Notes: generated by a model not told the origin, from the letters alone. A DNA stretch of 37,765 bases from Intoshia linei (GCA_001642005.1 LWCA01000252.1:1-37765), one strand, 5' to 3'. Numbered from the stretch's first letter, positions 12,231 to 32,987 are shown. Made by a program: numbers and translations.

Positions 12231-12231
12231 N

Positions 12232-12823
12232 CTTTTCATCTTCCTCTTGTATCGTCACTTTTTTATGTCTCAATATAAATATACTGTTCCAAATTTATTT
12301 AAATTGCTGGTGATAACGAGGTATTTTAACATATAAAATGTATTTATTCATCAAAGTTCTAATTTTTAATTTTATCTAACCTAATGGAAGTGAACCGAGT
12401 GTAAATTTATTCCAGATATCATATAATTCTATTGCAGTTTTATCACAATAGTATGCTTTTGATTTTCTTGGATTTTCCAATTGTAAAAAATGATATCTTC
12501 CTAAGATTTTCTTTAATGTAGATAATCTTGATGAACTGCTTAACGGTTCACTAATAAGTATTCTGTATGGACGTGCCAATCTCAATTTTTTTCTAGATAA
12601 TATATTTTTTGGTTGTGACATGAAGTATTAGAAAAATGAAATTAATTAATAATTTAAATAATAAACTTATGTTCACGTTTCAATAATAAAAAAAAATGCA
12701 TTTTAAAATTCTGCCTTAGAAAATTTTAATTAAATGAATTTTTTTTGCATATTCGTGATCAGCATATAAAAATACACCTATATCCAAATATACTTTTTGA
12801 TCTTTAAAAAAGTGCACACCCTA
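12232..12823 (-). mobile_element. hATm-like transposon 5' end (within the duplicate of 842-1710)
   Basis: Matches 842-1433, including the TAGGGTGTGCAC terminus at 12823. Confidence 0.75.
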
Positions 12824-13537
12824 ATGTTCAATGAATATTGTTCATTTTTGGTATAAGGGATTTTTCAGAAAAATATTGGTAAAAGGGGTTTTTTCCTTAA
12901 GGGTTGGTAAAATTTTGATTTTTTCTAATGCGATTTTACTAAATTGAATAAACTATGCTAAAAATTTATCATTTACCCCAATTATCTAAAATTTTCGTAT
13001 TCACCCCTAATAAAAGTATTTACCTCATGAGAATCACTGCAATATTTGATTAAATTTTATTTAGAAAGGTGCCGTCTTATTAATTTTTTTAGGAAGTTAG
13101 TGCGGGCTTCGAACTGTAAATGCTTTCTCACCTCTACTTGTAAAAGTACTTGTAAAAAATGAAAACTTAATCGATTGAAGTTAACAAGATTCAAATTAGA
13201 GTTGTATACAAAAAAAAATTTTAAAGTTACTAATAATTGTTAAAAATCAGTCGTTAGGTTATTTTTTTATAGGTTATTTAAATTGCCCTACTCATCAGTA
13301 ATTCATATTATCAGTTTTTTCTTGTCAGTTTCATTCTCATCAGTAATTTTAATACATTTTCGATTTAAATTCATTTTATATATATTTTTAATTTCTTTTG
13401 ATTTCACCATAGGTATTGTTATCGACAAGATTAAAATTATTTTTCAATTAAAAATGCTTTTGAGATTTGTTGTCATTTAAGTATTATCTTTGTAAATGTG
13501 ATCTTTTTTTTATAATTTGAGCTGAATATATATTATC

Positions 13538-14100
13538 CCAACTTATATAATATGCTACGTGATTTTTGTTTGTGTGTGTATGTGTGTTACACTTTATGTA
13601 AATAACTACCCGTCTTAGAATTTTATAAAGTCGACATTTCAATTACAGTTTTTTCAGTGGGTGTTCGCAAACTTAATTTCAAACTCCCAATTTCATATCT
13701 TACGGGTCAAAAACCCCAGTTGTCCCTTTTTTTGAAAATCAAACGAGTTGAAGAATTTAAAAAAATATATACGCTGATACGGACTTTAAAATCATAAACA
13801 TTACCATAAATTTAAATGCTGATGCGGATTTTAAAATCATAAACATTATCATAAATTTAAATTTAAAAAAATACACTGATGCGGATTTTAAAATCATAAA
13901 CATTATCATAAATTTAAATTTAAAAAAATTATATTTTCAAAGCCAAAACCACAAATTATCCTGCTTTTTTTAATAAAAACAGCTCTAGAATTTCAATATT
14001 CATATATTTTTTTTTTGTATTTTATTTTTAATAGTTGAGATCGAAATTTAAAAATATACATAGATTAATATAAAATTTAATTAACAAAATAAAATAATGT
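13538..14100 (+). mobile_element. Non-autonomous Helitron, 5' portion
   Basis: Starts A|TCCCAACTTATATAATATGCTACG..TTTGTTTGTGTGTG and is the reverse complement of the 5' ends of 20116-21659 and 25764-27126. Contains ~57-bp internal tandem units at 13770-13930. Confidence 0.7.
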
Positions 14101-14993: not shown

Positions 14994-15125
14994 AAGACAC
15001 TTGAACCCATTATCAGAATTGTTAAAGAAAAAATGCAGGACGAAGACTACGTTAGAGCTTATCGATCTGTATTTGGTGTAATGATTGCATCATTGGTGAC
15101 AAAATTTTATAACGTAAAACCATGA
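14994..15125 (+). CDS. Globin exon 2 (G7-H helices), intact; exon 1 not found in window
   Basis: ttgtag acceptor followed by KTLEPIIRIVKEKMQDEDYVRAYRSVFGVMIASLVTKFYNVKP*. Clearly homologous to the exon 2 copies at 18938, 24750 and 30258. Confidence 0.78.
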   Translation, partial: KTLEPIIRIVKEKMQDEDYVRAYRSVFGVMIASLVTKFYNVKP

Positions 15126-15343
15126 TATTCCAAAAGAGTACAGATTTGCTTCTGTTCCATTATATTTTATGTATATTTCAAATATTTTATTATTTATGAT
15201 ATATGTGTATAATTAAATTGGTCACGTTATGGTGTTATATTTTCTTAATCTAATGTAGATTGTAGTAATATCATAAAATTTTTCTTTCTTTGTCACTTAT
15301 GTCGTTGATTAATCAAAATGAAACATTTATCTATGTTATATAT

Positions 15344-15644
15344 CAAGGGTCGGCAACCAGTGACCCATATAATAATTTTAATGCCCCTTTTAGTAAATAT
15401 GTAAATTACTTATTTTTTAACTTTTAAACACCGTTTTAAACACTTTCTACTAGAATTGGTTCATTATAATCATTTTAATACTGAATTTTCAAATCGCCCT
15501 GGGTTTTATTTTGTTGAATATACTAGAAACGTGTCTCTTTATTTGAAATTGAAATGTATCATGTGTAAATTTGAAAAAACAAGTCCCGTGGAATTTTTTG
15601 ATATAAAACAGTGGCCATGAGATACAAAAGGTTGCCGATCCTTG
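15344..15644. mobile_element. hAT-type MITE
   Basis: TIRs CAAGGGTCGGCAACC / GGTTGCCGATCCTTG with 8-bp TSD TTATATAT on both sides. Confidence 0.85.
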
Positions 15645-15982
15645 TTATATATTATACATACACTAATAAATAATAAATTTACATCTCTAACATTATTATC
15701 TCATAATGACTACATGTATTTACATTTAATCTACACTTTAATTTTTATTAATCTTTTGACCATTAGGCCACACTTGGAAGGAATTTAAAATCTAATCTTT
15801 TCGGGTAGGTTAATTTCGACTCTGATCCGACTCTGACGGCTAAATTTTTATGGGAACTGGGTATCTGGAATATAAAAACGTACACAGACTATGCAATCCG
15901 TCAAGTTCAATAATTCATCAACATTTTCCAACTGTAAACATGTTTACATACGATAGATGTTCGATTTTCGAATAGTATAAAT

Positions 15983-18900
15983 ATGCTAAAGTATAATTTA
16001 TTAAAAGTGTCATTTTGTGATATTAGTTTTGTCATAAAAACTTGGAATTCAATCATAAACACCAAAGAATGTGCAATATTGTTTTATAAACAATTATTTA
16101 CAATATATCCAAAATCTCAACTGTTTTTTAAGAAATTTCCCAAAGTTGAAATTAACGAATTAGAAAACAACAGTCAGTTTCTGTTTCAATGTATTTCTAC
16201 ATGGGAAGCAATTTCTCGTGGTATAAATTACTTGTCTTGTAATCTACTAGATGAAGCTAATGTGGAATTAATCAAATTTATTAAAATACATCGAAAAGTA
16301 GAAAATTTTCAAGGTTACATGTTTAAGGTAATGTAAATATTGAACACTTTTTGTTATATATTATACTTTTACGTACTTTACTTATATAAATTTGCAATCT
16401 ATTTAACCTACTATGTATAGTATATTATGTCTAATGTCTGTGTGTAACCGTCTATTTAAAAATATCACAGTAAGAATATAAAAACCCACTTTCTAATATA
16501 CATTTTTCGGGAGTGATGTTTATATCTATGTGTCATTTTCGGAAATTGAGTTATTCAGGGTCAAAAACCGATTTGACCTTTTTTAAAAATAAAATCGATC
16601 CAAAAACTTAATAAAACATAACTTCTGAAACACTTTTTAAAATAATAAACATTATCGTAAATCTCAGCCTCACAAACACACACATTCATTGTCAAAATCC
16701 CCAATTTCCCTGTTTAAAAAAGAAAACATGTCCAAAATTTTATAAAACTTATATTCTTGGATAGTTTTTAAAATAATAAGCATTATCACAGATCTCAACT
16801 TCAACAAAGTACTTTTTCATGATAAAAACACATAATCACCTTTTTTAACGAAATAAAAAGAGTCCTAGAATGAGTTAAAAAAGCACTTTATATTGATTTT
16901 TTTATTTCACCATTTAAAAAATATTGGTTGATAATATATTAGAACATATTAAAAGTTATTTTTGACGGGAATGCGTAGATTTCTGGGATTAAAATTTTGT
17001 TTTTATATTAACTTGAATAAGCAATATCAGAATAATTTTTTTTTAATTGTGATAAGTTATCACTGATAACGTAAATTATTAAAATTTTTTGGTTATAATA
17101 AAATAGTTTCGAAATGCAAAAAATGAATACTAAAGTGCTTTTTTGAACGTAAAGGCGTTATTTTGCTAGATTGAAATTTTTTAAGTGTGTTAGCTGGATA
17201 TAACTGTATCATCTGTATTTTTTTTTAAATTATAGGGTTGTTTTCATTTTTTAAAAAAAAGGGTAATCTGAGGTTTTGATCGTGAAAATAAACTTTTTTG
17301 AGGTTGCCATTTATGATAATGCTTATGATTTTATAAACTATCCCCAAATTTATATTGTATAAAATTCTAGAACTTTTTTCATTTTTACAAAAAAGGGTAA
17401 TTTTGGGTTTTGTCCATGAATATGTTTGTTTTAAAATTAAAAATTATCATAATATTGATGATTTTAAATTCTTAATCAGATTGTGGATTTTTTATAATTC
17501 TAGGACGGGTTTGAATTTAAAAAAGGACAATTGGGGTTTTGACCTTGAAGGACTCAATTTCTGAAAATAAAATTTACCGTAAAACAATCTATCTCGAAAA
17601 ACTGTAATAGAAATATAGAATTGCTAAAATTCGAATCTTCTTACATTTTTAAATAAAATGAAACAGACAGACACACAAACAAGCAGACATACAGATAAAC
17701 ATTTATGATTACTAAATTACTTTATATAAGTAAGGATTCTATAGCATATGTTCGCATTTATACAAATGTATGAAATTTTCATGTCGCTATATATATATTT
17801 GCATTTTGGCGTATAAAGGTAAAATAACAGGATTATAAATTAATTTGGATATTCCCTTTAGAAAATTATTTAAAATTAATTTTAACTTTTCATTTAATTT
17901 TTTCATTTTTAATTTACAGTCGTTAGAGTCTAAATCAGGGTTTTTTTTAACCTTTTTTAAATTTCGCTACCGGTTAGCCGGATCAATTTTTTCCAGCACC
18001 CTGTAAAAAATAAAAAAGTGTATCATTATATAATTATGGATATTTTGGGGTCCCTGTGAAAATTTAATAATCCACGGTAAAACGGTTTGGTTATTTCAGA
18101 TCTATTCAGCAAATTCAAATACAATTGTACTTTGTATAAATAATACTATTAAAATTTAATCAAAATCTGTTAAAGTAATTTTGAATATCTCAATAATAAT
18201 ATATCTTGTAGTACAACTACAAGTAAGTAGTGAGTTATCTACTCAGTCGAAAAATATTTTTAAAAATTATGCACAGACTACAATGTATGTAACATTTAAT
18301 TAAATTACATTAATTAATGTAAAAATGGAGCTACAATCAGTGACGATTCTGGCTAATCGAGATCACTCGGGCTAAAATTTTTATGACAACCACACATTTT
18401 TTTTTAAATTAACATAACTAAGATATAAATAATTTCTCAAAATTTTAGATGTAACCGCTTTATAAATTTAATCTATAGATTTATTTACTAGGTAAATTTA
18501 AATATGCCAGAGTTATATGTATTTAAAATTTAAATTGATTTAAACGTTTATGAAAATATTTCGCTTAGTGATTGTCAAGTGAATAATCTTTTCTGAATTT
18601 CAGAATCTGAATATATAATTGTGCTCATATTTACAAATTAGAAATTAATTTAACAATTATTAAATATTTTATTTTTTTTATTATTTTTCAAAAAATATAA
18701 AAATATCAACTCGGGCTTTGCCCGAGTAACCCGAGTTGGAGAGTCGCCACTGGCTACAATACATGTGTACCTATAAAAATGTATATACAATATATCAAAT
18801 CTTTCAATCTTTTTCTGAGTGGATCACCTTTAGTTTTTATTTACGTTAAAGGTACGTTTAGTAGTTTCATTTAGCGGGACATCAATTTTTTTTTAATGTA

Positions 18901-19087
18901 GACAATATGACTTAATATTTACCTAAAATAATTTTAGATGATGGTGAAACCAATCTGTCATGTAGTAAAAGAAAAAATACAAGACGAATCATATGTAAAA
19001 GCATATAAAACAGTATTTACAATCATATCCAATTTATTATGCGAACATTTCGACAATATCCAATATGATGATAAAATTGTAAAGTAA
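15983..19087 (+). CDS. Globin 1 (164 aa, divergent Cys-rich paralog), exons 15983-16327 and 18938-19087
   Basis: Globin fold landmarks: TrpA12 (IKTW), FYKQLFTIYPKSQLFF (ProC2, PheCD1), GlnE7, proximal HisF8 (KIHRK). Donor AAG|GTAATG and acceptor TTTTAG|ATG place the intron at G7.0. Confidence 0.88.
16374..17736. mobile_element. Two opposed Helitron-related fragments in the globin 1 intron (+ copy from ~16374, - copy with 5' TC end at 17736)
   Basis: ACTTTACTTATATAAA..GTCTGTGTG on + and A|TCCTTACTTATATAAAG..GTTTGTGTGTCTGTCTG on -. Internal blocks (e.g. GGGAATGCGTAGATTTCT, GGGGTTTTGACC) are shared with the 20116-21659 element. Confidence 0.62.
18338..18752. mobile_element. hAT-type MITE
   Basis: TIRs CAGTGACGATTCT / AGAGTCGCCACTG, subterminal CTCGGG/CCCGAG motifs, perfect 8-bp TSD GCTACAAT. 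Confidence 0.85.
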
Positions 19088-19171
19088 TATAAACATAAAT
19101 AACTATTAATATGTTAAATTGTAATAAAAAATTTATATACAGAGTAAAATGTACTGCTAAATAATTTAAAA

Positions 19172-19750
19172 TTAAACATGATGAATATGATAATGTGCAT
19201 AAGAATTTTTACAATACTTGTAAATTCGAAAACGTCTACGTAATCTGAACAATTGTGTTGCAAATTCATGTTTTCTATTTTCAAGAGTAATTTTATTTAA
19301 ATTATTTTTTACATTTCTCCAATTTTCTCTAGATGATTTTTCATAGTGGCGAAATTTTAAATTTCGTAGAGAAAGTTTATTTAAATGGACCAAATTTGAT
19401 TTTTCATCATGTTTCTCAATTCTATAAATTGGTTCATTAATGTGATTTGCCATTTGTCTTGATTGGAATACTCTCGTTCTATTTTCAATTTTCGGTTCAT
19501 TGAATGATTGCAAGTGGTCATCAAAGTTTTTCCACGGCTTTGAACATGCATGTAGATTGAATCCTCGTCTAACAGTTTCAATGTTTGCTTCAATTGTTTT
19601 AGTGTTAGTTTTAGTTGGATTTTTTTGGTTTTTTAAAATTTTTAATTTTTTCAAATGTTTTCCATTTTTTTGATCGTTTTGGTCTTGATTATCCTTATTA
19701 AATTTATTTGTTTTATTAATCGGTTGGAATTTTTTATCATTTTTTAACAT
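19172..19750 (-). CDS. Hypothetical basic protein (~192 aa from ATG 19750; may be a terminal exon)
   Basis: Open for more than 600 nt in very AT-rich DNA, with non-low-complexity C-terminal two thirds. Converges on the globin 1 3' end. No recognisable domain. Confidence 0.5.
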   Translation of the reverse strand: MLKNDKKFQPINKTNKFNKDNQDQNDQKNGKHLKKLKILKNQKNPTKTNTKTIEANIETVRRGFNLHACSKPWKNFDDHLQSFNEPKIENRTRVFQSRQMANHINEPIYRIEKHDEKSNLVHLNKLSLRNLKFRHYEKSSRENWRNVKNNLNKITLENRKHEFATQLFRLRRRFRIYKYCKNSYAHYHIHHV

Positions 19751-20115
19751 TAAAATTAAAAATTTGATAATTTTAACTTTACACAATGCTGTTATCCAAA
19801 CGTAATCAAGTCTATAATTTTGAAACTAATTTAGTGACCCATATACCATGTTCTCATTAAAGTTTAAAATTTTGGTTAAAAAGTAAATTTAATAAATAGT
19901 AGCATGTCAATGTTAATCAATTTATTGATTGACTGTCCCAAAATTTAGTGATTAAATTTTTAATTTACATAAATACAAATGTATTAGTACATCTTATGTT
20001 TAATGTTATTTTTATTAATTACAATTATAATGTATGTTTATTAAAAAATTAATTTATTACATTTTATACATTGTTATTGCAGTGATTGATAAAATTGACT
20101 ATTTATATATCCAAA

Positions 20116-21659
20116 CTAGCTTGGCTGTTTTGTACTACGTACAAACAGCACCTAGCTCTGCCGAAGGCACTCTTTTATTATACCAAAAAAATAAAAAAAT
20201 ATTCACGTTGAAAATCTAACTTAAAAATCCTACTATTAACTATTATCAATCCTTTAAAGGAGTGGTTCCCAAATTTGTTTCACATGGAACTGTCATAACA
20301 TTACTTTTTACTTTAAAGTGAGTTATTCCATCTTAATTTTTTTTGTTAACATTTGCGTAAAGAATTTTCAAAACAATTATTATCCCATTTTATTTATTTA
20401 TTAAACAGAATGTGTGTATAATATTAAAAATAAAGTAAAAACAGTCCAATCCTAAAAATTGTCATAAATAGCATAAATTCCAGAAAAAATAAAATTAAGA
20501 AACCTATTTTGTCATTTTCAATGTGATGACATATATTCAGTATCAATTTAATAAATAAATCCTAAAAATTGTCATAAATAGCATAAATTCCAGAAAAAAT
20601 AAAATTATAAACTATTTTGTTATTTTGAGTGTGATGACATACAAATGTATATTCAGTACCAATTTAATAAATACTTAAAAAAATACCAATTGTGTATCAA
20701 TAATTAATTAAATAATTAATTTTACCATTATTGCAAAGCATTGTAATATAAAAATTATTGATGTTAAAAATGTGTCCATACTTTTGGTCTTTTTTCTTGT
20801 GAATGTTACTTTTCTTTTTAACATTTTCAAATTAAATTAAGTTAGTATCAAAACATTTATAAATTCATTGCCGTAGATGTTCAAAATGTTTAGAAAATAA
20901 AAATTTGAAATTTAAAAATTGCGTAGCAATGAAAAAAATTCCGAAGAAAAGAATTATATAGATTTTCACCCATATTTCTTGACTGGAAATGTGTAGACGT
21001 ACAATCCACATTTTTTTTGAAATTGTAGGAATTTACATTTTCAATTTTTTATTTTAATTGATTTATTTGAAAAATATTGGTTGAATATATTAAAAGTATT
21101 TTTCACCGGGAATGCGTAGATTTCTCGGGTTGAACTTTTGTATTTATATCAACTGGAATAGGTTCTATCAGAATAATTTTTTTTTAATTTTCGGACCATT
21201 AATTATTTCATATTTTTTGTTTTAATAAAATATTTCGGTAAAAAAATATATAAATACTAAAATGCTTTTTTGACCGTAAAGTCGTCACTTATTTGGATTA
21301 AAATTTTTGAAATTCTAGGGCTGTTTTGATTAAAAAAAGAAGCGTAATTTGTGGTTTTGGCTCTGAAGATATAATTTTTTTAAATTGAAATTTATGATAA
21401 TGTTTACAATTTTAAAATCCGCATCAGCGTATATATTTTGTTAAATTCTCCAACTTGTCTAATTTTCAAAAAAAGGGACAACAGGGGTTTTTGACCCTTA
21501 AGATGTGAAATTGGGAGGTTGAAATTTATCTTATTATACGTCCCGGAAAAAACTGTAATTGAAATGTTGTCTTTAAAAAATTCTAAGAGTGCTAGTTATT
21601 TCAAAAAAGTAACACACACACACAAACAAAAATAGCGTTGCATTTTATATAAGTTAGGA
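20116..21659 (-). mobile_element. Full-length non-autonomous Helitron
   Basis: Minus strand reads A|TCCTAACTTATATAAAATGC..GTTTGTGTGTG at the 5' end, and hairpin GCTGTTTGTAC-GTA-GTACAAAACAGC followed by CAAGCTAG|T at the 3' end. Inserted between A and T with no TSD. Internal ~112-bp tandem duplication at ~20445-20672. Confidence 0.82.
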
Positions 21660-22453
21660 TTGATTAATAGCATTTATTACAACCAACGACACGACAAAAC
21701 TACAAAATCTAATATTACATAAGCCAAGTGTTTATAAACCTATTATACTCGATGCTCCGAAAATTAAGAACAAATAAAAAAAATTGCCACAAATTAATTC
21801 CATATCGCTAATAGCCACTTTCTAGTCCATGATGTGGACTTAAAACATTTAAATTAACAACTACACTAACAAATAAAACTAGTAATTTACAAGATTGAAA
21901 AATATTTTATTTTTAAAATTCTCACTTGCAAAAATGAGCTTAATTGGGCATCTTCAATTTTTTACAGAGAATTATTGGTTATATATATATGGGTCGATTC
22001 GAGATACTGATCCAGATGTACCCATAGATGACCGTATCCATAATCGATATGTATATAGTCGATTCTATATAAAATTGACTAACAATAAGAACTTACTTAT
22101 GAATTATGGAGGGGCGATTATAAAAACGGATTGAGAATCCGTGCAATAAAATATTGAGAAATGAATTGATTATGTTCGTTTAATTGACGTCACTTTCTTA
22201 AATTATATTTTAATTAATGAATGCATTGTTTATCTTAGTCTTCGTCATTTTGCTACACCGTAACGCGTGAGAAGACAAGAATTTCAATGTATACTGATAA
22301 TAAAGTGTTTAATGAAAAAAATAATTAAATTTAATCCACTTTAAAAACATACTTCAGATGAATTTTACCAACATTGGAAAGCAATTTCAAAGCATAAAAA
22401 TGTTTTAATTATTTCCATGTAATTCTCGCGCCTGGTGATTGAGTTCCAACTGT

Positions 22454-22710
22454 TTAATTTTGGGTTTTATTTTGGTTAATTTCATAACAATATTTCATCT
22501 TTGACAAATTAATTTTGTTTCTATTTTTAGTCAATATTTTATTAACAGAACTGAAACTACTTTCAACCATGTAAGAGGTTGGAAAAAACAATAATATCCT
22601 TGACATTTTTGAATGCATTAGTGGATAAAGTGATTTTGAAGACTCACATCCCCACAATGAAAAATTTCCACCTTTCTCAAAACGGTACTTGGCTTCTTCG
22701 TCATTTTAAC
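22454..22710 (-). mobile_element. hAT (Charlie/Buster-like) transposase C-terminal dimerisation-domain remnant
   Basis: Translation YPLMHSKMSRILLFFPTSYMVESSFSSVNKILTKNRNKI fits the hATC FPTSYLxExxFS..KxRNRL pattern. Confidence 0.75.
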
Positions 22711-23159
22711 ATTTTGATTGAATTTTAGAAATTAAAATAATGGTGAAATGAGAAATGAGTCAAAAGTAATGTTGTATTGGTGAAGTTGCAGTTATCCATG
22801 AATATGTTATACATTATACATGTTTCATAATTTATTTAAGATTCGAATTCTCTGATACAAGCTCATTTGATTTGATCTTCATTCGATAATACTACAAGTA
22901 ACATCTATGATTTTCAGTGGTGTAGCGTCATAGTGTGCAAAATGTTCGCCGAACACCCTAGAAAACTTAAAAAATTTATATTTTGACCCACTTTTGATAT
23001 TATTTATTTACATTACGTACTGTTCACGTTATATTATGTTACATCGTACACGTATTTGACATGTGTGAATTATAATTAGTTACGTTAGTTATGTTACGAA
23101 ATAAAAAAAAATAAATACCAAAGTGGTTAAAAATTAAAAATTTTTGCGTGTGTTCACTA

Positions 23160-23410
23160 TAGATAACCGTATAAGCTGTAATTTTTTTTAAATTCCAGGA
23201 CCATTTTTATTTTTTAAAAAAATGGTAATCTGGGTTTTTATTGTGAAAATTCACTTTTTTGAGGTTACCATTTATGATAATGCTTATGATTTTAAAAACT
23301 ATTCCAGAATTTATGTTATATAAAATTTTGGGACATATTTAATTTTTAAAAAAATGGGTAATTTGGAGTTTTGACCATGAAGGATTGCATTTATGAGGCT
23401 GATATGTACG
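23160..23410 (-). mobile_element. Helitron-related internal fragment
   Basis: Closely matches 17200-17420 (GGTAATCT..TTTTTTGAGGTT.CCATTTATGATAATGCTTATGATTTTA). Confidence 0.6.
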
Positions 23411-23578
23411 ACAATGTTATGTTATGAAACTGTTAACCTAAATATCTGCAAGGGTCTTTTCAAGTTTTTTTTTACCGTTGTAATTAACTATAGCGACGAT
23501 ATGTAACCAGTAATTATTATCATTTGATAAAAATTTATATATAAAGTTTTACATTTATTTAAAATATTTTTAAATTAG

Positions 23579-23695
23579 CTGGCACTGGAACCACTTTTAT
23601 ATGTGGTTAAATAAAAGTTCATAACACAAGCTTATATAGAAGCCTACAAGAACGTATTTAGTACAATTTTTGATACAATTATATCAAATTATTGA
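23579..23695 (+). pseudogene. Globin pseudo-exon 2 with premature stop; no exon 1
   Basis: AATTAG|LALEPLLYVVK*KFITQAYIEAYKNVFSTIFDTIISNY*. TAA at 23612-23614 replaces the GAA (Glu) seen in the paralogs. Confidence 0.85.
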
Positions 23696-23879
23696 TAAAC
23701 TAATTTAAACTTAAACTTAAAAGAAAAATTTACTACAAGTTGTAGTTCAATAAATATTACTTGTCTTTCATAATTATTATTGTTGGCGAAAGAGGCGTTA
23801 ATAAATTTTGTTGAATGTGTCGCATTGACAAAAATCAGTAAATACGTAAAATTAAATTTATAATTTAATTACGGATTAT

Positions 23880-23950
23880 GGAACGACGGATATATTATCC
23901 TGATTGACTAAATGTAATCGATTTCTTCACGCGATGGAAAATATAAATGG
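23880..23950 (+). promoter_or_regulatory. Putative globin 2 promoter block, shared with the globin 3 upstream region
   Basis: GGAACGACG..GATATATTATC..CTAAATGTAAT here versus GGAAAGACG..GATATATTATC..CTAATGTGAT at ~27676-27725, at a similar distance from the ATG. TATAAAT at ~23942. Confidence 0.4.
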
Positions 23951-24038
23951 TTATTGTTATCCACATTATTGTCTAATCATTAGATTCTAATGGTTATTAT
24001 TAAATATTGTAATTATTCATTCTTATTTGATTTTAAAT

Positions 24039-24866
24039 ATGGTATCATTAAATCTTTCAGGTCTTACTAAAACTGATATAAACATGGTGTTGGGTAGTTG
24101 GGAAAGCATCAATAATGACGAAGCATCATCTATATTCTACAGAGAGTTGTTTAATACTTATCCAGATACTAAAAGTCTTTTCGTAAAGTTTTATAGTGTT
24201 GACAATGATAAACTCATTGATAACCCGGCTGCGTTGAAACAACTCAGGGTTACGTGGACGGCTATAACTACTCTTATTGATTATTTGAAAAAAGGCAGAA
24301 TTGACGAGGCCAACAAAGCAATTGATTATTTGATTGAAAAGCACAGAAAAATCAAAACGTTTCAAGGACCAATGTTTAATGTATATTTATATATAATAAT
24401 TTTTGTTGGTAAAAATTTAAAGCATACCTTGTTATTCCGTCAAAAAATGGTTTTAATAATTCTGTATAATCAATGCATGTAAGAATGCCTTCATTATTTC
24501 CAATTTAAAAAATTTTAGCTGTGATGAATGAAATGTTTTCTATCTTATCTATTTTTTAAATATTGATTTAATTCCATTTTGAAGTGTATATTTACATTTT
24601 ATTTACAGGTTTTTATGTGACACTCACTGTAAATAGAATATTTTATATACAGTGTATTTATAAAAACTCGAAAAAAATTAAATTTAATATTTTTTAAAAT
24701 ACTGTTAATACTGAGATATTTAAATGTATAATTAATATTTTAAAATCAGATGGCACTGGAACCACTCTTGTATTTGGTTAAAGAAAAATTGACAAGTCAA
24801 GCTTATATCGACGCTTACAAGAAGGTTTTTGGTGCGATTTTTTTAACAATTATATCAAAATATTGA
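24039..24866 (+). CDS. Globin 2 (152 aa), exons 24039-24380 and 24750-24866
   Basis: SWE (A12), FYRELFNTYPDTKSLF (TyrB10, ProC2, PheCD1), NPAALKQLRVTW (GlnE7, ThrE11), EKHRK (HisF8). G7.0 intron AAT|GTATAT..ATCAG|ATG. AATAAA downstream. Confidence 0.92.
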
Positions 24867-25763
24867 CACAATTTTACACATAAACGAAAACTCAATTTTA
24901 GATAAAATAATTCAATGCATCTCAATAACTTATATATTAATAAATATTAAACTATTTCATAATTATACTACATAGGTTCAATATATCATTTGATTCAAGG
25001 TTCATGATTCAGATGGAAAAATGTACAGAACTGGGGAAAAGGCGTAGGGTCACATGGTCAAGGCCTATAATCATGAGGGCCTACTTTTTTAATTTATTAA
25101 TTGATCGGTAATGTTGGGAAATTTTCCAAGCATGTCAAAATTATTTAATACTTAAATGTTTTATATGGGCTTTTCCAAGAAATGTCTGTAAATAGCCCGA
25201 TTGGTGGAACATGCTTTCATAAAGCCATTTTAAAATTTTTCAAAATTATACAAAATGCGCAAAAATTTACTTTGATATGGATAAAGTGGCCAAAGTCAAA
25301 ATGTAACTTTTTGATACAAATATTTTAAATTACTTTTGAATAAAATCTAATTTAAACTTTTTAAATTTGATGTAAATTGGTATATTTATTACACAATAAA
25401 ATAACCACAAAATTTAAATTAAGTCATTTTAACATGTTTTAAATACACACATAAATAATAATGTGAATTTTGTATCTAATCAATCCAATCAAAAACTTAA
25501 ATCGACCCAAAGAGGATGATTCTTCCATTATTGTGAACCACTTTTCAGTACAGATCAGTATTGTTACTATCAACTTTAAATCTTTACTTTAGACATAAAA
25601 CTTATGTCTAATAAAAGAATTTTCTTTAAATTTTAATATCGGCAAATTTTAATTGATTAAAAAAAGTCAAACATGTAACTTTTTGATAAAAATATTTTAA
25701 ATTGCCCTTCAATAAAATTAGAGTAAAAAAAACTATGTAATTTGAGTAAAATAATATATTGCA

Positions 25764-27126
25764 CTAGCTTGGCAGTTTTGTACTACGTACAAACAGCACC
25801 TAGCTTTGACGAGGGCACTCTTTTATTATACCAAAAAAATAAATTCATGTTGAAAATCTAACTTAAAAATCCTACTATTCACTATTATCAATCGTTTAAA
25901 GAGTGGTTCCCAAATTTGTTTCAGGTGGAACCGTCATATCACATTACTTTTTACTTTAAAGTAAATTATTTCATATTAATTTTGTTTTAACATTTGCGTA
26001 AATAATTTTAAAAACAATTATTATTCCATTTTTTTAATTTATTAGACTGAATGTGTGTATAATATTAAAAATACAGTAAAAACAGTCCAATCTTAAAAAT
26101 TGTCATAAATAGCATAAATTCCAGAAAAAATAAAATTATAAAAACCTATTTTGTCATTTTCAATGTGATAATATATATTTAGTGTCAATTTGATAAATAC
26201 TTAAAAATACCAATTATGTATCAATACTTAACTGAATCTTCACTTTATAAACATTTCAGTCGAATTTTACCAATATTGCAAAGGATTGTAATAAATATAA
26301 AAATGATACTAACAAATTTTTTTAATTTCGTTGTTTAGTTTCTATTTAAATTTGTATTTCAAATATTTTGAGAGTTTGAAATTTAAAAATAGCGTAGCAA
26401 TGAAACAAATTTCGAAGGAATGAATTATATAAATTTTCACCTATATTTCTTTATTGAATATATGTAGATGTTCAATTCACATTTTTTTTGAAATTGTAGG
26501 ATCAATATTTAAGATTTCAATTTTTATTTTAATCGAAATATTTAAAAAATATTGGTTAATATTATATTAAAAATTATTTTTTATCGGGAATGTGTAGATT
26601 TCTCGGGTTGAACTTTTGTATTTATATCAACTGGAATAGGCTCTATCAGAATAATCTTTTTTTATTTTCGGACCGTTAACTAAAGCACATTTTTTGTTTT
26701 AATAAATATTTTGTAAAAAAATATATGAATACTTCAAAATATATGAAATCGTCACTTATTCGGATTGAAATTTTTTGAAATTCTAGGGCTGTTTTCATTA
26801 AAAAAAGAAGGGTAATTTGTGGTTTTGGCCCTAAAGATATAATTTTTTTAAATTTAAATTTATGATAATGTTTATGATTTTAAAATTTGCATCAGCGTAT
26901 ATATTTTTTTAAATTCTCTAACTCGTTTGATTTTCAAAAACAGGGACAACTGGGGTTTTTGACCCGTAAGATGTAAAATTGGGAAGTTGAAATTATGTTT
27001 GCGCACACCCCGGAAAAAACTGTAATTGAAATGTGCACTTTATAAAATTCTAAGACTGTTAGTTATTTAAATACAGCGTAACACACACACAAACAAAAAT
27101 CGTGTAGCATATTGTATAAGTTCGGA
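25764..27126 (-). mobile_element. Full-length non-autonomous Helitron (same family as 20116-21659)
   Basis: 5' A|TCCGAACTTATACAATATGC and 3' hairpin plus CAAGCTAG|T. Colinear with the 20116-21659 copy but without its internal duplication. Confidence 0.82.
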
Positions 27127-27825
27127 TAAAATATATTAAATATGTTTCTACATTTCCTCAATGCCAATTTACTAAAACTAATAAATTTACTAAAAACTAT
27201 CCACGAAAAGACAGTCATTACATTTTAATATACGGTATATATTTTATGTTATCATAAAATATAGACTACAAAATTTTAATAATATCTAGGAAACATTAAG
27301 ACCAAATTAAAATCAATGTCTTACCATTATATCAAAAATATTGACTTTGTGTCATGTTTAATATAATGTAAATTTTCTTTTTATTTTTAATGAGAAATTA
27401 AACTAGACTAATTTATCAAACCAATTTATTATCTAATAACTAATCAAAAGATTGCTATATAAAATCATAAATTTATAATTTTATGAAATGTGATTTATAG
27501 CACAATAGATTTGAAAAATTGATCAAATGATCAATATATATATAAAAATATACTGCATTCATTTGGATTTTTATTTATTACTGTATCAACTTCATAAATT
27601 TCACTCCAGTTCACCGAATTGAAATGAAATGTAATTATGATACTGAATTTTGGAAATTTAATAATAATAATAATTGGAAAGACGCATTAGATATATTATC
27701 AAATCATTATATTTAGCTAATGTGATTACGTAATAGAAAATGTCTTTCAGTGGATATTCCAATTCAAATTATTGTCATTTTTCTTATCTAATATCTATTC
27801 ATTATTATTTACATTAATTTTAAAA

Positions 27826-30374
27826 ATGAAAACTTTAAACTTTTCAGGCCTTGCTGAAACTGATATAAAGATGGTTTTGAGCAGTTGGGAACGTCTCAAT
27901 AATGACGAAGCATCATCTATATTTTATAGAGAGTTGTTTAATATTTATCCGGATACTAAAAGTCTTTTTGTAAAGTTTTATAGCGTTGATAATGATAAAC
28001 TATTGGATAACCCGGCAGCACTGAGACAGCTTAGACTCACATGGAAGTCTATTACGACCCTAGTTGATCATTTGAAAAACGGTAGGATGGATGCGGCTAA
28101 TAAAGATATTGTGGCTTTAGTTGCTTTGCACAAAAAAATTAAGACTTTTCAAGGACCAATGTTTAATGTATATTTTTTAATTTTTACTATTCAAATACCG
28201 TATTATCTCTGCAATTCGTCGGTTCCTAGTTCGCCAGTCCTCTACATCTCCATCGGCCTAGGTATAAAACATTTTCTAATACCAATTAACCGTTTATATA
28301 TGTATATCGTAGTTTTTCAGTTACATTTCGGTTAACTTAATTATTATCACTATGCTAAAATTATTTCACGTCCCAATATTGCCGAACTGCAGAGAATACA
28401 GTGAAGAGAATACACTGTACAGCAGGGGCCCAAACTTTTTTTTATGCCATCAACTTTAAAATTTTTCAATGAGTAGCGATCGATCAATACATTGATTAGA
28501 AAAATGTTTCTGATCAGAACCTATGTTAAAAATTGAAAAATGTGATCGTTGAAAACATAAAAATTAAAATTCGGAATAATTCGAAGCATTTTCGCTGAAT
28601 ATTTGAAAATTATCGACAAAACTTAGTATAAGAAATAATGGACTTATCTGAATGTCATACTTTAATGTAGCAAGTAAATCATTTAATAATATTGCTATAT
28701 AAGGATTTATATAAGTAAAGTTCCGATACTCACTCCACATGTAATATGATACTTTTTAACAATATATAAATACAATTAAATTTTATAAATATTAAAATAA
28801 ATCATTTTAAAATAGACATCATTTTAATGACGAGTATTATTAAAATAAAAAATTAATTTTAATTTTTTAATTTTGTCGATCGTCTAAAAAATTATCTTCA
28901 ATCGATCAGTCGGTCGCGATCGACAAGTTGAGCATCCCTGCTGCACAATAATATTGTAATATATAATTGTACAATGTAATATATAGGAAATTCCAGTGAA
29001 CAAAGGCATAAATATATATTTAGAATAAATATGTTCTTCAAAATTGACATTTTTTCTTAACATTGGTCACATTATGGAGCTATTAATTTCATAATTATGT
29101 TTATTTTAGTGCGTTGACTATATGTATAATTTTCTCGAATATCTGTAGAAATTTTAACTTTTTAAAAAATATTTAAAAAAAATTTTTCAAATAATGGGTA
29201 TAATGTAGTTTTTTATAACCTTTCTATATTTCAAACAATGTGTAGTTAGACTCTTTATTAATCAGTTATGAAATTTAAAGTTAAATAGAAATAATGATAC
29301 ATGAATTCAATGTTAATTATGTAAATTATCCAAAGACGATTTTTTGTTAAGATATTATAATTAACTTTAGTCTAATTGAGACTTGGCAATGTTAAGCTAG
29401 CATTTTTATATTATGTTTTATATGGATTTTTTTACCCTATTTTCAATGATTTTTTGTGGAATTTTTTATACCAAATTTTAGAGAGGGTTCTTAGGGAAAT
29501 TTTTTTATAAAAATTTGAAGGTTTTTTAAACGAATTTTAAAGATGGTTCCATTTTTTTAATTTGAATTTTTTTTGCTCCATCTTATTTACCAAAGTAAAA
29601 TGTGTAGACTTTTAAAAACATCAATTTTTATAATTTTTTTTCGAGAATTAGATTTTATCGCAAATTAGATTTCAGAAATTGAGTCTTTCCGGTATAAAAA
29701 ATAAAACGAGATCAACATTTTTTTATTATGATTCAATTTCAATTTCAAAAACTTATATATACATGGTCAAAACCACAAATTACCTATCTTAACTTATATA
29801 ATCGTATTTGTTTATGCAATTGTCATATGTGCAATGCACATTGTGCATGATTGTTATTTTATAAAACTAAAAAAACCAAGTATAAGCATTTAAAAAAATA
29901 TTACATTTAATACCGCTTTTCCAGTAAAAATATATGAATAGTTTCAATGTTAAGTTAAGATTTCGTGTTCAAAAAAGAAATTTACTGTTTACCATTTTTT
30001 TTGGGAAATTATTTCATTAAAACAAAACATTTGATATAATGAATGTTCTAGAATTTTATAATAAAAAATGGCCTTGGCACGTTTGGGAATCATTCATTTT
30101 AAAAGATTGGTAATAGTGAATAGTGGCATTGTTTATAAGATTTTATTTTTTTGGTATAATTAGAAAAGTCCTCCCTTAGCAAAGCTAGGTGCTATTTGTA
30201 CAAAATACAAAACATCCAAGCTACTATGTTATATTTATTTATTATATTAAAAATCAGATGGCACTGGAACCAATTTTACATTTGGTTAAAGAAAAGTTGA
30301 TAACACAGGCTTACATCAACGCTTACAAGAATGTGTTTGGTGCGATTTTTACAACAATTATATCAAATTATTGA
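27826..30374 (+). CDS. Globin 3 (152 aa), exons 27826-28167 and 30258-30374
   Basis: About 77% identical to globin 2 by hand count (35/152 differences). TyrB10, PheCD1, GlnE7, ThrE11 and HisF8 (ALHKK) present. Same G7.0 splice sites. Confidence 0.92.
28198..28401. mobile_element. Tc1/pogo-type MITE (degenerate)
   Basis: Inverted ends TA|CCGTATTATCTCTGCAATTCG and CGAACTGCAGAGAATACAG. Confidence 0.55.
28423..28940. mobile_element. hAT-type MITE
   Basis: Imperfect TIRs CAGGGGCCCAAACTT / AAGTTGAGCATCCCTG, subterminal CGATCGA motifs, near-TSD CTGTACAG/CTGCACAA. Confidence 0.65.
29690..30224 (+). mobile_element. Degenerate Helitron 3' portion ending just before globin 3 exon 2
   Basis: AAAGCTAGGTGCTATTTGTAC..TACAAAACATCCAAGCTAC matches the family's 3' hairpin and CTAG end. 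GGTCAAAACCACAAATTACC block at ~29765. Confidence 0.6.
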
Positions 30375-30565: not shown

Positions 30566-32987
30566 ATGAATGATGATAATTTTCAAAAGTTTGCAACACA
30601 TCTACATTGTAGAAATAATCTGTCATATACCTGTTAGAATACATTGTATTTATTATTCACTAAAATTATTAGATCTTAAAATTTAAGTCTTAAATTTTAA
30701 ATAGTAAAATAAACTATGATTTAATACACCTGTATCAATAATAATAAATTATAATATTATGAAATTTATTAGTATTTGTTATTTAAATGTTATTTTTATC
30801 TGTGCATTGATAAATGTTATTTATTCAGAGAATGTAAGCAGCAATAACGGTACATTTTTATATTAAAGAAATTTAATGGTTAAACTTAATAGTGATTTAA
30901 TGCTATATTTAGATGCAACTAAGAAAACGCTTGCAAAATTTATGATAGAAAAGGTAAAAAAAAATGTTAATTCTACTAATTATAATACACGGTGTATTAT
31001 AAATTCTTACATTTTTCTTTTATCTAGTTCACTGTTTCCAAACCTTTAAAGTGTCATGCCCCACTTTTATCTTTACGAAATTTTTACGCCCCACCATAAT
31101 TTATAACAAATATTTTCATGTGGTGTTCTAACAGATTTTTTTTATGTTTATATATTATTGCGCAATAAAGTGGGGTAAAATTAAAATGTACATGTAATAT
31201 ACCTAAATTTAACATACAATAAACCGAATTCATTGTTCAAAAAGTATCATTGCTGTAACTTTACCACTGTGTTTCAAATGTAGTTATAAGTTATAACTTT
31301 AAAGTTAAATGTGATAAATTCCTGATATAAATGTGATGTGGTCAATGATCATCATTGTAATCAAAAACGCATGTAAAAATACCTATAAAAATATATGTAA
31401 ATTTTAATAAAAATTGAGCTAATCAATGAATTTGTAACAATAGAAATTATTGACAACTAATCAATTATTTTGTTTTCTAAAATTTTTAAAGCCAACCAAA
31501 TATTCACAAGCCCACTTAAATTTTCTAAGCACTAGCGGTGGGGCGTACGCCCCACGTTAGGAATCACTGATCTAGTTTGTCCATGATAAGATCATGTCTT
31601 GGTCAAACTAGGAAACGTACACTGCAGATGTATGTTTCGCTTTTAGATTATGGTACTTTGGATTATTCTGCCGATTAAAACTTGTTTTATTTTAAATATT
31701 GAAACTGGACATTAAATTTCGCTATATTCTTACGTTTGAGGGACATTTATGTGAAAACAGTTACATAATTAGTCGTTTTATCCAATAGATACTTTTTAAT
31801 ATTTTCATATATTTAAAGGAAATTATTTTCAACATGTAAAAAATGTAAATTCAAGTAGTAATCTCGTATCACAATATATCCGCAAACTCAGCAGCAATAG
31901 CTACTTTTTGAACACCATTTAATATCCAGTCTCCACATATAGTATTTGTTTATTAAAATAAATACACTACGTTAGAATAATTCAGAATAAACGGTCACAT
32001 TTTCGCATCAAATCCATGGTCAAATTTTATACATATTAATTATAATATTAAAAATAGTATGAATCTAGGCAATATTGCACTTATTGTCGAAATTTCAAAT
32101 ATTTTCTTAAACATGAAGCTGTCGATTGGATGGTAATTTTTAATGTTTCATACAATTCAAATTTGTAAATACATAATAAATACATTTAGTCCATTATATC
32201 AAATCTCGCACCAATGTGTAATTCGAATAACACATTTTTTAGATACTTTGTAATTATTACGATAATGTTTTCAAAATGATGAGCTTTTTTATTTATAATT
32301 TAAATTAACCCTTTCACTGTCTGTCTATTCTATACTATACACAGCAATTTCACTTCACACGTCTGTGTATTCTATGATATACACAGCATAATTTGAAAAA
32401 CTTTATTCTTTTATTTTCATACATTTTCACATCAGTAATTTAAAAATAATATAAGTTTAACTTAAAACATAAATTCCAGACGTGTGGTGATAATACATAA
32501 AATTGCATCAGACAGTGAAAGGGTTAATCAAAGTACATGTATTCGATTTTTTATGGAAATTTATTTAATCTAAAACTATTTTGATTTTATATTATAACTC
32601 TTAATGATATTATAATGTCATAATTAATTAAACTAATTAATAGTGTCAAAATTATTTTGGACATGTTATTGGAGAAATTGGATTTGGAACATTACATGGA
32701 GTAAGCTTAAATACATGTATAATCATAATGAAAATGGTTTTTTGTCTGTGATTTCTAATGTTATGGGTTTTTAAATTAGCATTTCCAATAATAATCCTCA
32801 TATTAGTTATAATTATATTCATTTTTAGTGGTACAGTGAATATTGTGAACACATGTATTACTGTGACAGCTTGGAAAGAAAGGTATACATTTCAATTTTA
32901 TAATTAAAATATGCATTATACTTGTAAACCCATATTTAGTTGATTAACCTCATCTACGAACGCAAACACAAGAAAATTCAATGATTA
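30566..32987 (+). CDS. Probable multi-exon gene of unknown function with a C-terminal transmembrane segment (structure unresolved)
   Basis: Short AG..GT-bounded blocks can be joined in frame: INGHIFASNP|WQYCTYCRNFKYFLKHEAVDWM|SIISNLAPMCNSNNTFFRYF, CQNYFGHVIGEIGFGTLHG, FPIIILILVIIIFIFSGTVNIVNTCITVTAWKE. Candidate ATG at 30566, but the 5' exons could not be joined. Confidence 0.4.
31030..31569. mobile_element. hAT-type MITE
   Basis: Ends CACTGTTTCCAAAC / GTTAGGAATCACTG with perfect 8-bp TSD ATCTAGTT. Confidence 0.82.
32309..32523. mobile_element. piggyBac-type MITE
   Basis: Perfect 15-bp TIR CCCTTTCACTGTCTG flanked by TTAA on both sides. Confidence 0.88.

What the first reader, a model, noticed from the sequence alone, without database searches (positions are those of the whole stretch)
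14994..30374. Tandem five-unit globin cluster undergoing birth and death
Seen in sequence: five co-oriented globin exon 2 copies (14994, 18938, 23579, 24750, 30258) and three exon 1 copies (15983, 24039, 27826). These give three complete genes, one intact orphan exon and one pseudo-exon. They form two subfamilies: 14994/18938 share KEKxQDExYVxAY, and 23579/24750/30258 share ALEPxLxxVKEKxxxQAYI. None has a signal peptide. Inference: a lineage-specific expansion of intracellular oxygen/ligand-binding proteins in an otherwise compact genome, plausibly an adaptation to hypoxia or parasitism. The ORF track hides this because every gene is split.
Basis: partly seen in the sequence, partly recalled or inferred. 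Interest (0 to 1): 0.85.

Follow-up and report, generated by a model that had tools for sequence, protein, structure and literature searches.

The report
Tandem globin gene cluster in Intoshia
This stretch of the parasite Intoshia linei's genome holds five tandem copies of a two-exon globin gene (three apparently intact, one decayed, one reduced to its last exon), which is a real but ordinary gene cluster, two of whose genes are already in GenBank.

Summary
The window is a whole contig of the orthonectid Intoshia linei. It carries three globin first exons (15983, 24039, 27826) and five last exons (14994, 18938, 23579, 24750, 30258). All are co-oriented, with GT donors and AG acceptors at one phase-0 intron, which counts to the canonical G7.0 globin position.

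- **Gene B** is GenBank A3Q56_02502. It scores 36.5 bits on Pfam Globin, and its AF2 model (pLDDT 92.6) matches solved globins at TM 0.80-0.83.
- **Gene C** is A3Q56_02503. The public model reads through the donor and misses the last exon at 30258.
- **Gene A** appears in no protein database searched.
- **The 23579 copy** has an in-frame TAA, and a 9-residue relic of its first exon lies at 21948.
- **The 14994 copy** is an open orphan exon.

B and C have dN/dS of about 0.15. A, B and C keep His F8, Phe CD1, Tyr B10, Gln E7 and Thr E11.

The family has at least 10 loci on 8 contigs, and only Intoshia proteins match below 1e-12. The cluster is not one local burst: A is nearest a gene on another contig. 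High-copy repeats fill the introns and spacers.

No RNA evidence could be obtained, so the splicing of A and C and the hypoxia idea remain inferences. The scan's other note on this stretch (s1-789365) agrees.

The parts
14994..15125 (+). Orphan last exon (unit X): G-H helix part of a globin, 43 codons plus stop, open frame, AG acceptor directly upstream, no first exon found upstream
   Evidence: It is 45% identical to A's last exon. A random frame in DNA of this composition stays open over 43 codons about 2% of the time (my estimate).
15983..16327 (+). Gene A exon 1 (115 codons, helices A to G6); keeps Tyr B10, Phe CD1, Gln E7, Thr E11 and His F8; GTAATG donor
   Evidence: Pfam Globin 19.3 bits, below the 22-bit cut-off; 4e-27 to P0005. 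Absent from the protein databases searched.
16328..18937 (+). Inferred intron of gene A (2610 nt), filled with copies of a high-copy interspersed repeat in inverted arrangement
   Evidence: The junction is not confirmed by RNA.
18938..19087 (+). Gene A exon 2 (49 codons plus stop)
21948..21974 (+). Relic of the first exon of the decayed unit (psi): 9 residues identical to the B-helix of B and C, with synonymous differences; a gapped DNA similarity may run on to about 22034
   Evidence: Shuffle test: observed 9, maximum 7 in 200 shuffles.
22454..22657 (-). Remnant of a hAT transposase dimerisation domain, lying between the relic first exon and the pseudo last exon
   Evidence: PF05699, E 0.00096, 19.3 bits, below the 21.4-bit cut-off
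23579..23695 (+). Pseudo last exon (psi): AG acceptor kept, in-frame TAA at 23612-23614 where B has GAA
24039..24380 (+). Gene B exon 1 (114 codons)
   Evidence: Together with 24750-24866 it gives exactly P0001 = A3Q56_02502.
24381..24749 (+). Gene B intron (369 nt, GT..AG, phase 0, 12 residues after His F8)
24750..24866 (+). Gene B exon 2 (38 codons plus stop)
   Evidence: Adding it raises Pfam Globin from 27.5 to 36.5 bits and extends coverage to 3-114 of 117 positions.
27826..28167 (+). Gene C exon 1 (114 codons, 76% identical to B)
   Evidence: 27.0 bits; dN 0.13, dS 0.88 against B. It forms the N-terminus of P0002 = A3Q56_02503.
28168..30257 (+). Inferred intron of gene C (2090 nt), rich in repeats.
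   Evidence: The junction is not confirmed by RNA. The GenBank model instead reads through the donor.
30258..30374 (+). Gene C exon 2 (38 codons plus stop, 79% identical to B's); absent from the GenBank model
20115..21660 (.). High-copy interspersed element between units A and psi; a collinear copy at 25763-27137 lies between B and C
   Evidence: 85-90% identity between the two copies; more than 5000 first-look candidates genome-wide, with many near-full-length copies at 80-88%.
13525..13996 (.). A roughly 470-nt high-copy repeat upstream of unit X; further copies at about 16535-16882, 17221-17682, 21307-21660, 23184-23418 and 26764-27137
   Evidence: 3198 first-look candidates; 40 scored at 84-93% identity

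Best explanation
This is a tandem array of five paralogous units of a single-domain, intracellular, 3-on-3 globin gene in the orthonectid Intoshia linei. Each unit has two exons split by one phase-0 intron. That intron lies 12 residues after the proximal His, which is the canonical G7.0 globin intron; the B12.2 intron is absent.

Three units look functional:
- **A** (15983-16327 plus 18938-19087) is unannotated.
- **B** is A3Q56_02502.
- **C** (27826-28167 plus 30258-30374) is mis-modelled in GenBank as A3Q56_02503.

One unit is a decayed pseudogene. Its first exon is reduced to a relic at 21948, a hAT remnant sits inside it, and its last exon at 23579 carries a TAA. The fifth unit is only an open last exon (14994); its first exon was either lost or sits in an assembly gap.

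The array belongs to a fast-evolving globin family, so far seen only in Intoshia, with at least 10 loci. Other contigs show the same mix of intact, partial and stop-bearing copies, which is the pattern expected of birth-and-death evolution. Insertions of high-copy repeats stretched the introns to 0.4-2.6 kb, in a genome whose median intron is 57 bp.

**Shown:** globin homology and fold, splice-site conservation, pseudogene lesions, purifying selection between B and C, and the pocket residues Tyr B10, Gln E7, Thr E11 and His F8.

**Inferred:** that A and C are spliced as modelled and expressed, that the proteins bind haem, and that they hold O2 through the Tyr/Gln hydrogen-bond network, with Thr E11 possibly moderating affinity as in Cerebratulus mini-haemoglobin.
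For: **Organism and gene B.** An exact 152-aa match identifies I. linei A3Q56_02502.

**Globin identity.**
- Pfam Globin scores 36.5 bits on spliced B, 27.0 on C exon 1 and 19.3 on A exon 1.
- A family profile matches 71 PDB globin chains; the best is Spisula nerve haemoglobin at 7e-8.
- The AF2 model built on the paralog alignment has pLDDT 92.6 and pTM 0.86.
- Foldseek matches it to Spisula, tardigrade, Lucina, cytoglobin and myoglobin structures at TM 0.80-0.83 and rmsd about 2 A.
- All 30 ESM Atlas feature hits are globin clusters.

**Gene structure and state of the copies.**
- Donors and acceptors sit at the same phase-0 site in all copies.
- B versus C gives dN/dS of 0.13/0.88 in exon 1 and 0.11/0.33 in exon 2.
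- The psi stop is seen directly in the sequence, and the relic first exon passes the shuffle test.
- The pocket residues were placed by alignment to plant and mollusc globins.

**The wider family.**
- The census finds at least 10 loci. The paralog P0007 is modelled with a roughly 2.1-kb intron at the same site.
- Only Intoshia proteins match below 1e-12 among 1.8 billion representatives; the next hit is the Biomphalaria multi-domain haemoglobin at 1e-10.
- In the tree, B and C are sisters at 88/98 (ultrafast bootstrap / SH-aLRT), and the Intoshia copies are separated from the mollusc domains at 97/96.

**Surroundings.** The spacers and introns are made of high-copy repeats. The median intron in this genome is 57 bp (PMC6543705).
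Against: - There is no RNA evidence.
- Introns of 2.1-2.6 kb are about 40 times the genome median, so A and C may be spliced differently or not at all.
- The GenBank predictor chose another structure for C.
- A's first exon alone falls below the Pfam cut-off (19.3 against 22 bits).
- The spliced models of A and C were not searched or folded as joined proteins.
- Lineage specificity rests on very few outgroups.
- dN/dS over the 38 codons of exon 2 does not separate the pseudo-exon from the intact copies.
Confidence: 0.85

Rival explanations
1. Only gene B is a working gene. A and C are unprocessed pseudogenes or dead duplicates, cut off from their last exons by transposon insertions. On this reading the array is mostly wreckage around a single globin gene.
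For: - The introns of A (2610 nt) and C (2090 nt) are far above the 57-bp genome median and are filled with repeats.
- The public annotation did not join C's two exons, and A was never called.
- No expression data are available.
Against: - B and C have a dN/dS of about 0.15 over 114 codons.
- A and C keep open frames, exact splice signals and all haem-pocket residues.
- The paralog P0007 is modelled with a roughly 2.1-kb intron at the same site.
- The true pseudogene in the array shows what decay looks like: a stop codon and a lost first exon.
Confidence: 0.15
2. The orphan last exon at 14994 is not an orphan. Its first exon is the one on the 2.7-kb contig C6 (P0005 = A3Q56_08285), which was left out of this scaffold at the single-N joint at 12231. 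The array would then hold four complete genes.
For: - C6 ends 460 bp after its first exon and has no last exon.
- A's first exon is nearest C6's (40% identity), and A's last exon is nearest the orphan (45%), so the two pairs have matching divergence.
- The orphan's frame is still open and its acceptor is intact.
- The window has 1-N joints at 1711 and 12231, flanked by a 100% identical 869-nt duplicate, which suggests a scaffolding problem.
Against: - No sequence overlap links C6 to the region upstream of 14994. C6's matches to the window are all interspersed repeats.
- The argument rests only on matching divergence.
Confidence: 0.3
3. The extra copies are assembly artefacts (uncollapsed haplotypes or mis-joins), or foreign DNA from the nemertean host, rather than true paralogs in the Intoshia genome.
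For: - The scaffold has suspicious joints and an exact internal duplicate at 842-1710 and 12232-13100.
- Contigs C1736 and C1957 carry 93-95% identical copies, which could be alleles.
- The Tyr B10 / Gln E7 / Thr E11 triad is also found in a nemertean nerve globin.
Against: - The copies in the window differ by 20% or more at DNA level and by 21-61% in protein, far beyond allelic variation.
- GC content is 22-29% throughout the window.
- The introns and spacers carry repeats present in thousands of copies across this genome.
- The best non-Intoshia match is a mollusc.
- The nemertean mini-globin is not among the 60 PDB profile hits shown or the top 50 fold hits.
Confidence: 0.03

Closest known systems
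Vertebrate alpha- and beta-globin gene clusters (the textbook birth-and-death arrays with pseudogenes)
   Same: Both are co-oriented tandem paralogs of different ages, with pseudogenes interspersed. Both have an intron at G7.0: beta-globin's intron 2 lies between codons 104 and 105, 12 residues after His F8, which is the same count as here (established knowledge).
   Different: Here there are two exons rather than three, because the B12.2 intron is missing. Partial units consisting only of a last exon occur. Nothing is known of any developmental switching, and the sequences are only about 20% identical to vertebrate globins.
Spisula solidissima nerve haemoglobin (PDB 8OUP)
   Same: It is the best solved match by sequence profile (7e-8) and by fold (TM 0.80, rmsd 2.4 A). 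It is a spiralian intracellular single-domain globin of similar length.
   Different: Identity is only 19%. Spisula's B10 residue aligns as Phe where Intoshia has Tyr. The Spisula protein is hexacoordinate according to its entry title, whereas the Gln E7 of A, B and C cannot ligate the iron as a His would.
Cerebratulus lacteus nerve mini-haemoglobin
   Same: It has the same distal triad of Tyr B10, Gln E7 and Thr E11. In that protein, Thr E11 re-orients Tyr B10 and brings O2 affinity down to myoglobin level (PMC3430218).
   Different: The mini-haemoglobin has about 109 residues and lacks parts of the fold, whereas these are full 152-aa 3-on-3 globins. No special sequence affinity was seen, so the shared triad looks convergent. 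That the host of I. linei is a nemertean is my own knowledge and is probably a coincidence.
Lucina pectinata haemoglobins II/III and Ascaris haemoglobin (Tyr B10 / Gln E7 high-affinity globins)
   Same: Lucina HbII and HbIII are among the best sequence and fold matches. The Tyr B10 / Gln E7 pair is normally linked to slow O2 release and very high affinity (PMC3430218).
   Different: Identity is about 20%. Thr E11 is present here. The oligomeric state and ligand kinetics are unknown.
Biomphalaria glabrata multi-domain haemoglobin (XP_055883606.1)
   Same: It is the closest protein outside Intoshia in 1.8 billion representatives (1e-10, 23% identity). It is from a spiralian and has Gln at E7 in the aligned domains.
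   Different: It is a chain of 12 or more globin domains in a 1983-aa protein, so its score is summed over domains. Its domains form their own clade (97/96), and B10 is not Tyr.
Caenorhabditis elegans globin family (more than 30 genes)
   Same: A small invertebrate with no circulatory system keeps a large and very divergent set of intracellular globins, some with Tyr B10 / Gln E7 (PMC2867796, abstract seen). The nearest ESM Atlas clusters are nematode globins.
   Different: No orthology was shown. The nematode genes are mostly dispersed, whereas several Intoshia loci are tandem with partial copies.

Membership tests
Globin (Pfam PF00042, 3-on-3 M-family globins) | Score over the Pfam gathering cut-off (22 bits) | tested here: met
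   Spliced B (P0001) scores 36.5 bits over profile positions 3-114 of 117. C exon 1 scores 27.0 and B exon 1 27.5. A exon 1 alone scores 19.3, below the cut-off, but matches the Pfam-passing paralog P0005 at 4e-27. The last exons alone give no hit.
Globin (Pfam PF00042, 3-on-3 M-family globins) | Eight-helix 3-on-3 globin fold | tested here: met
   Tested for B only. The AF2 model has pLDDT 92.6 and eight helices. Foldseek gives TM 0.80-0.83 and rmsd 1.9-2.7 A to solved globins, with 62 hits at E <= 0.001. The joined models of A and C were not folded.
Globin (Pfam PF00042, 3-on-3 M-family globins) | Proximal His F8 and Phe CD1 | tested here: met
   Both are present in A, B and C in alignments with paralogs and with plant and mollusc globins. 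One paralog copy on contig C1736 has Tyr at F8.
Globin (Pfam PF00042, 3-on-3 M-family globins) | Binds haem and a gaseous ligand | not testable with these tools
   This needs expression and spectroscopy.
Globin (Pfam PF00042, 3-on-3 M-family globins) | Ancestral intron positions B12.2 and G7.0 | tested here: inconclusive
   The intron lies in phase 0, 12 residues after His F8, in all copies. This equals G7.0 by comparison with beta-globin codons 104/105 (established knowledge). The first exon is uninterrupted from Met to G6, so B12.2 is absent. One of the two positions is therefore kept.
Birth-and-death tandem gene cluster | Co-oriented tandem paralogs of different ages | tested here: met
   Five units lie on the + strand. 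B and C are 76-79% identical, while A is 33-39% identical to them. The tree agrees.
Birth-and-death tandem gene cluster | Pseudogenes or fragments beside intact copies | tested here: met
   The psi unit has a TAA at 23612-23614 and a relic first exon. There is an orphan last exon at 14994. The same pattern occurs on C1736, C1957, C1369 and C2994.
Birth-and-death tandem gene cluster | Purifying selection on retained copies | tested here: met
   B against C gives a dN/dS of about 0.15 in exon 1 and 0.34 in exon 2. A is too diverged for dS to be estimated.
Birth-and-death tandem gene cluster | Retained copies are expressed | not tested
No run found is on record as RNA.

The most novel reading that the evidence does not exclude
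Orthonectids, among the most reduced bilaterians and without any circulatory system, evolved their own radiation of at least 10 globins. One branch of it (this cluster plus the C6 gene) converged on the Tyr B10 / Gln E7 / Thr E11 pocket of nemertean nerve mini-haemoglobin. These globins would capture or buffer O2 (or detoxify NO or sulfide) for the plasmodium living inside host tissue. The duplicated last exons might also serve as alternative 3' exons, giving G-H helix variants.
Probability: 0.15. Interest if true: 0.55.

Novelty: new member of a known kind. Interest (0 to 1): 0.33.

Why it matters
- **Annotation.** The work corrects the public annotation of I. linei. A3Q56_02503 should be a 152-aa globin, one globin gene (A) is missing, and several paralog models are chimeric.
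- **A gene family nobody has described.** A genome reported at roughly 8,700 genes (my recollection of the genome paper, not checked here) keeps at least 10 very divergent globin loci. My literature searches found no paper on orthonectid globins.
- **Use to specialists.** For globin specialists it adds a spiralian parasite lineage with a Tyr B10 / Gln E7 / Thr E11 pocket and a retained G7.0 intron. For genome biologists it is a local example of repeat-driven intron inflation and gene decay in an otherwise intron-miniaturised genome.

It does not reveal a new kind of system.

Tried and rejected

- **Read laying.** Local scripts masked them. Loci L004 and L020, which contain them, came back from the genome search but were not used.
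- **Single-sequence AF2 model and its Foldseek search.** The model had pLDDT 62.8 and gave no hit at E <= 0.001 (TM about 0.3). It was replaced by the alignment-based model.
- **PDB phmmer search.** The top hits to designer PPR repeat proteins are summed-repeat artefacts and were ignored.
- **Word-indexed homolog searches.** They returned only Intoshia proteins, or nothing.
- **Sigma-70 promoter scan.** It is irrelevant to a eukaryote and was disregarded.

**Ideas rejected**
- **A first exon upstream of 14994.** None was found using seven family queries.
- **The collinear 1.5-kb blocks as proof of a segmental duplication.** The blocks at 20115-21660 and 25763-27137 are copies of a high-copy interspersed element, so they prove nothing about the duplication.
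- **Host contamination or gene transfer.** Rejected on base composition, genome-wide repeats inside the introns, and the identity of the nearest relatives.

- **Joined models of A and C.** These have no reference, so they were not searched or folded. They were examined exon by exon only. B's spliced protein was available as P0001.
- **A broad phylogeny with spiralian globin classes.** It was not possible, because only one mollusc and one plant outgroup were retrievable.

Full report
**What the window is.** A search with the first exon at 24039 returned one protein, 100% identical: A3Q56_02502 of Intoshia linei, 152 aa, on a contig of 37,765 bp, which is the window itself. I. linei is an orthonectid, a tiny and highly reduced spiralian parasite. 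GC content is 20-30% throughout the window.

**Checking the observation.** A tblastn of that protein against the window finds three first-exon copies and five last-exon copies, all on the + strand.
- First exons: 15983-16327, 24039-24380 and 27826-28167.
- Last exons: 14994-15125, 18938-19087, 23579-23695, 24750-24866 and 30258-30374.

Every first exon ends with Met-Phe plus one residue, followed by GTA. Every last exon is directly preceded by AG, in phase 0.

Joining 24039-24380 to 24750-24866 reproduces the GenBank protein exactly. The copy at 23579 has a TAA at 23612-23614 where gene B has GAA.

The last exons at 14994 and 18938 are 45% identical to each other. Those at 23579, 24750 and 30258 are 68-79% identical. 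Between the groups, identity is 29-39%.

I add a relic of a fourth first exon at 21948-21974. It is nine residues identical to the B-helix of B and C, with synonymous differences. In 200 composition-preserving shuffles the longest such match was seven. No first exon lies upstream of 14994.

**Are they globins?**
- Pfam Globin gives 27.5, 27.0 and 19.3 bits for the first exons of B, C and A.
- For spliced B it gives 36.5 bits over positions 3-114 of 117, so the last exon supplies the G-H helices.
- A profile of the paralogs hits 71 PDB globin chains at E <= 0.01. The best is Spisula nerve haemoglobin at 7e-8, followed by a chironomid haemoglobin, hagfish haemoglobin and Lucina HbII/III.
- A single-sequence AF2 model was poor. 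With a 10-row alignment of paralogs and window exons, the model reached pLDDT 92.6 and pTM 0.86, with eight helices.
- That model matches solved globins at TM 0.80-0.83 and rmsd about 2 A.
- All 30 ESM Atlas feature hits are globin clusters.

Aligned with plant and mollusc globins, A, B and C keep His F8 and Phe CD1, and carry Tyr B10, Gln E7 and Thr E11. This agrees with the scan's other note on this stretch.

The intron lies 12 residues after His F8 in phase 0. That is the same count as beta-globin intron 2 (codons 104/105, established knowledge), so it is the ancestral G7.0 intron. The B12.2 intron is absent.

**Gene models and public annotation.**
- **B** is correctly annotated.
- **C** is A3Q56_02503 (P0002, 247 aa). 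That model reads through the conserved donor into the intron and joins exons beyond 30876, so it skips the last exon at 30258. The homology model (27826-28167 plus 30258-30374) gives a 152-aa globin, 76-79% identical to B.
- **A** is in no protein set. It is absent from the 12 hits of an exhaustive phmmer over 1.8 billion representatives and from a direct search.

The joined proteins of A and C have no reference. I therefore examined them exon by exon and left out searches and folds of the joined models.

**Selection and decay.** B against C gives dN 0.13 and dS 0.88 in exon 1, and 0.11 and 0.33 in exon 2, so both have been under purifying selection. The psi unit shows real decay: its first exon is reduced to a relic, a hAT dimerisation-domain remnant lies at 22454-22657 on the minus strand (below the Pfam cut-off), and there is a stop in its last exon.

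The orphan at 14994 is as far from A's last exon as A's first exon is from its nearest relative, yet its 43-codon frame is still open. By my estimate that happens about 2% of the time by chance in DNA of this composition. It was therefore functional until recently, or it still has a partner.

**The wider family.** Six-frame searches of the whole assembly find at least 10 loci on 8 contigs, all with the same intron site.
- C1953 (P0007) has an intron of about 2.1 kb.
- C2716 (P0004) has a wrong C-terminus in the public model.
- C6 (P0005) ends 460 bp after its first exon.
- C1736 carries one full unit with Tyr at F8 plus a partial unit; P0003 is stitched from both.
- C1957 carries a partial unit with stops plus a full first exon. 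The latter is fused in P0006 to a kinase-like fragment (judged by eye).
- C1369 and C2994 carry stops.

Partial and broken copies beside intact ones are therefore typical of the family.

In an exon-1 tree, B and C are sisters (88/98, ultrafast bootstrap / SH-aLRT). Six other loci form a clade (87/84). A and the C6 gene sit unresolved at the base, each being the other's nearest relative at 40% identity. The Biomphalaria domains are a separate clade (97/96).

The window's genes are thus not one local burst. A, B, C and C6 share Gln E7 and Thr E11, whereas P0003, P0004 and P0007, representing the six-locus clade, have Ile or Met at E7.

Outside Intoshia the best hit is the Biomphalaria multi-domain haemoglobin at 1e-10, a score summed over domains. 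This fits a fast-evolving, lineage-specific radiation of spiralian origin, but the outgroup sampling is thin.

**Surroundings.** The spaces between and inside the units are interspersed repeats.
- A roughly 470-nt element has 3198 first-look candidates in the genome.
- A 1.2-1.5-kb element has more than 5000.

The latter explains the collinear blocks at 20115-21660 and 25763-27137, so those blocks are not evidence of a segmental duplication.

The median intron in this genome is 57 bp (PMC6543705). The introns here are 369, 2090 and 2610 nt and are made largely of these repeats. This is the main reason for doubting the splicing of A and C. Against that doubt stand their intact signals and the selection result.

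**What could not be done.** Transcription and junctions are therefore untested.

**Function.** The Tyr B10 / Gln E7 pair is normally linked to slow O2 release and very high affinity. In Cerebratulus mini-haemoglobin, Thr E11 re-orients Tyr B10 and lowers affinity to myoglobin level (PMC3430218).

The most likely role is intracellular O2 storage or buffering. NO or sulfide handling is an alternative. All of this is inferred. The Cerebratulus protein shows no special sequence affinity, so the shared triad looks convergent.

**Novelty and verdict.** Tandem globin clusters with pseudogenes are textbook. Two of the three genes are already in GenBank and are flagged as globin-domain proteins. No paper on orthonectid globins turned up.

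What is new is the re-annotation, the third gene, the fragments and the family census. I file it as a new member of a known kind, of modest interest.

Noticed in passing
window 842-1710 and 12232-13100; single N at 1711 and 12231: An 869-nt stretch is repeated at 100% identity. The first copy ends at a one-N scaffold joint and the second begins at another. This looks like a scaffolding artefact, and missing sequence could lie at 12231.
   Followed up: partly
window 360-836 / 2207-2686; 1192-1435 / 2690-2930 / 12582-12825: Further local duplicates at 92-95% identity lie in the first 13 kb of the contig.
   Followed up: no
window 6643-8562 (+): A 639-aa open reading frame, the longest in the window, has no Pfam match. 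Five other ORFs of 108-172 aa also have none.
   Followed up: partly
window 13525-13996 and at least six other places; genome-wide: A roughly 470-nt interspersed repeat has thousands of copies at 84-93% identity. In A's intron, two copies form a large inverted pair.
   Followed up: partly
window 20115-21660 and 25763-27137: A 1.2-1.5-kb high-copy element has many near-full-length copies on other contigs. It was not classified.
   Followed up: partly
window 14104-14271 (-) and 19172-19786 (-): By eye, the short ORF resembles a transposase C-terminus, and the 204-aa Lys/Asn-rich ORF resembles the tail of a retroelement integrase. Pfam gave no significant hit for either.
   Followed up: partly
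window 27826-28335 and 30876-31049 (GenBank A3Q56_02503, P0002): The public model for gene C is a chimera of the globin first exon, intron read-through, and downstream exons with no known domain.
   Followed up: yes
G000 C1736 (L009, L014) and C1957 (L010, L017): These two contigs carry 93-95% identical globin units arranged as full plus partial copies. One full first exon has Tyr in place of the proximal His, and the C1957 partial unit has stops. P0003 is stitched from two units, and P0006 fuses what looks like a kinase fragment to a globin first exon.
   Followed up: partly
G000 C1369 (L013) and C2994 (L015): Two more family members carry in-frame stops. The C1369 copy seems to have a very short intron, of about 33 nt, at the G7.0 site.
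   Followed up: no
It was not among my Pfam Globin hits and was not examined.
   Followed up: no
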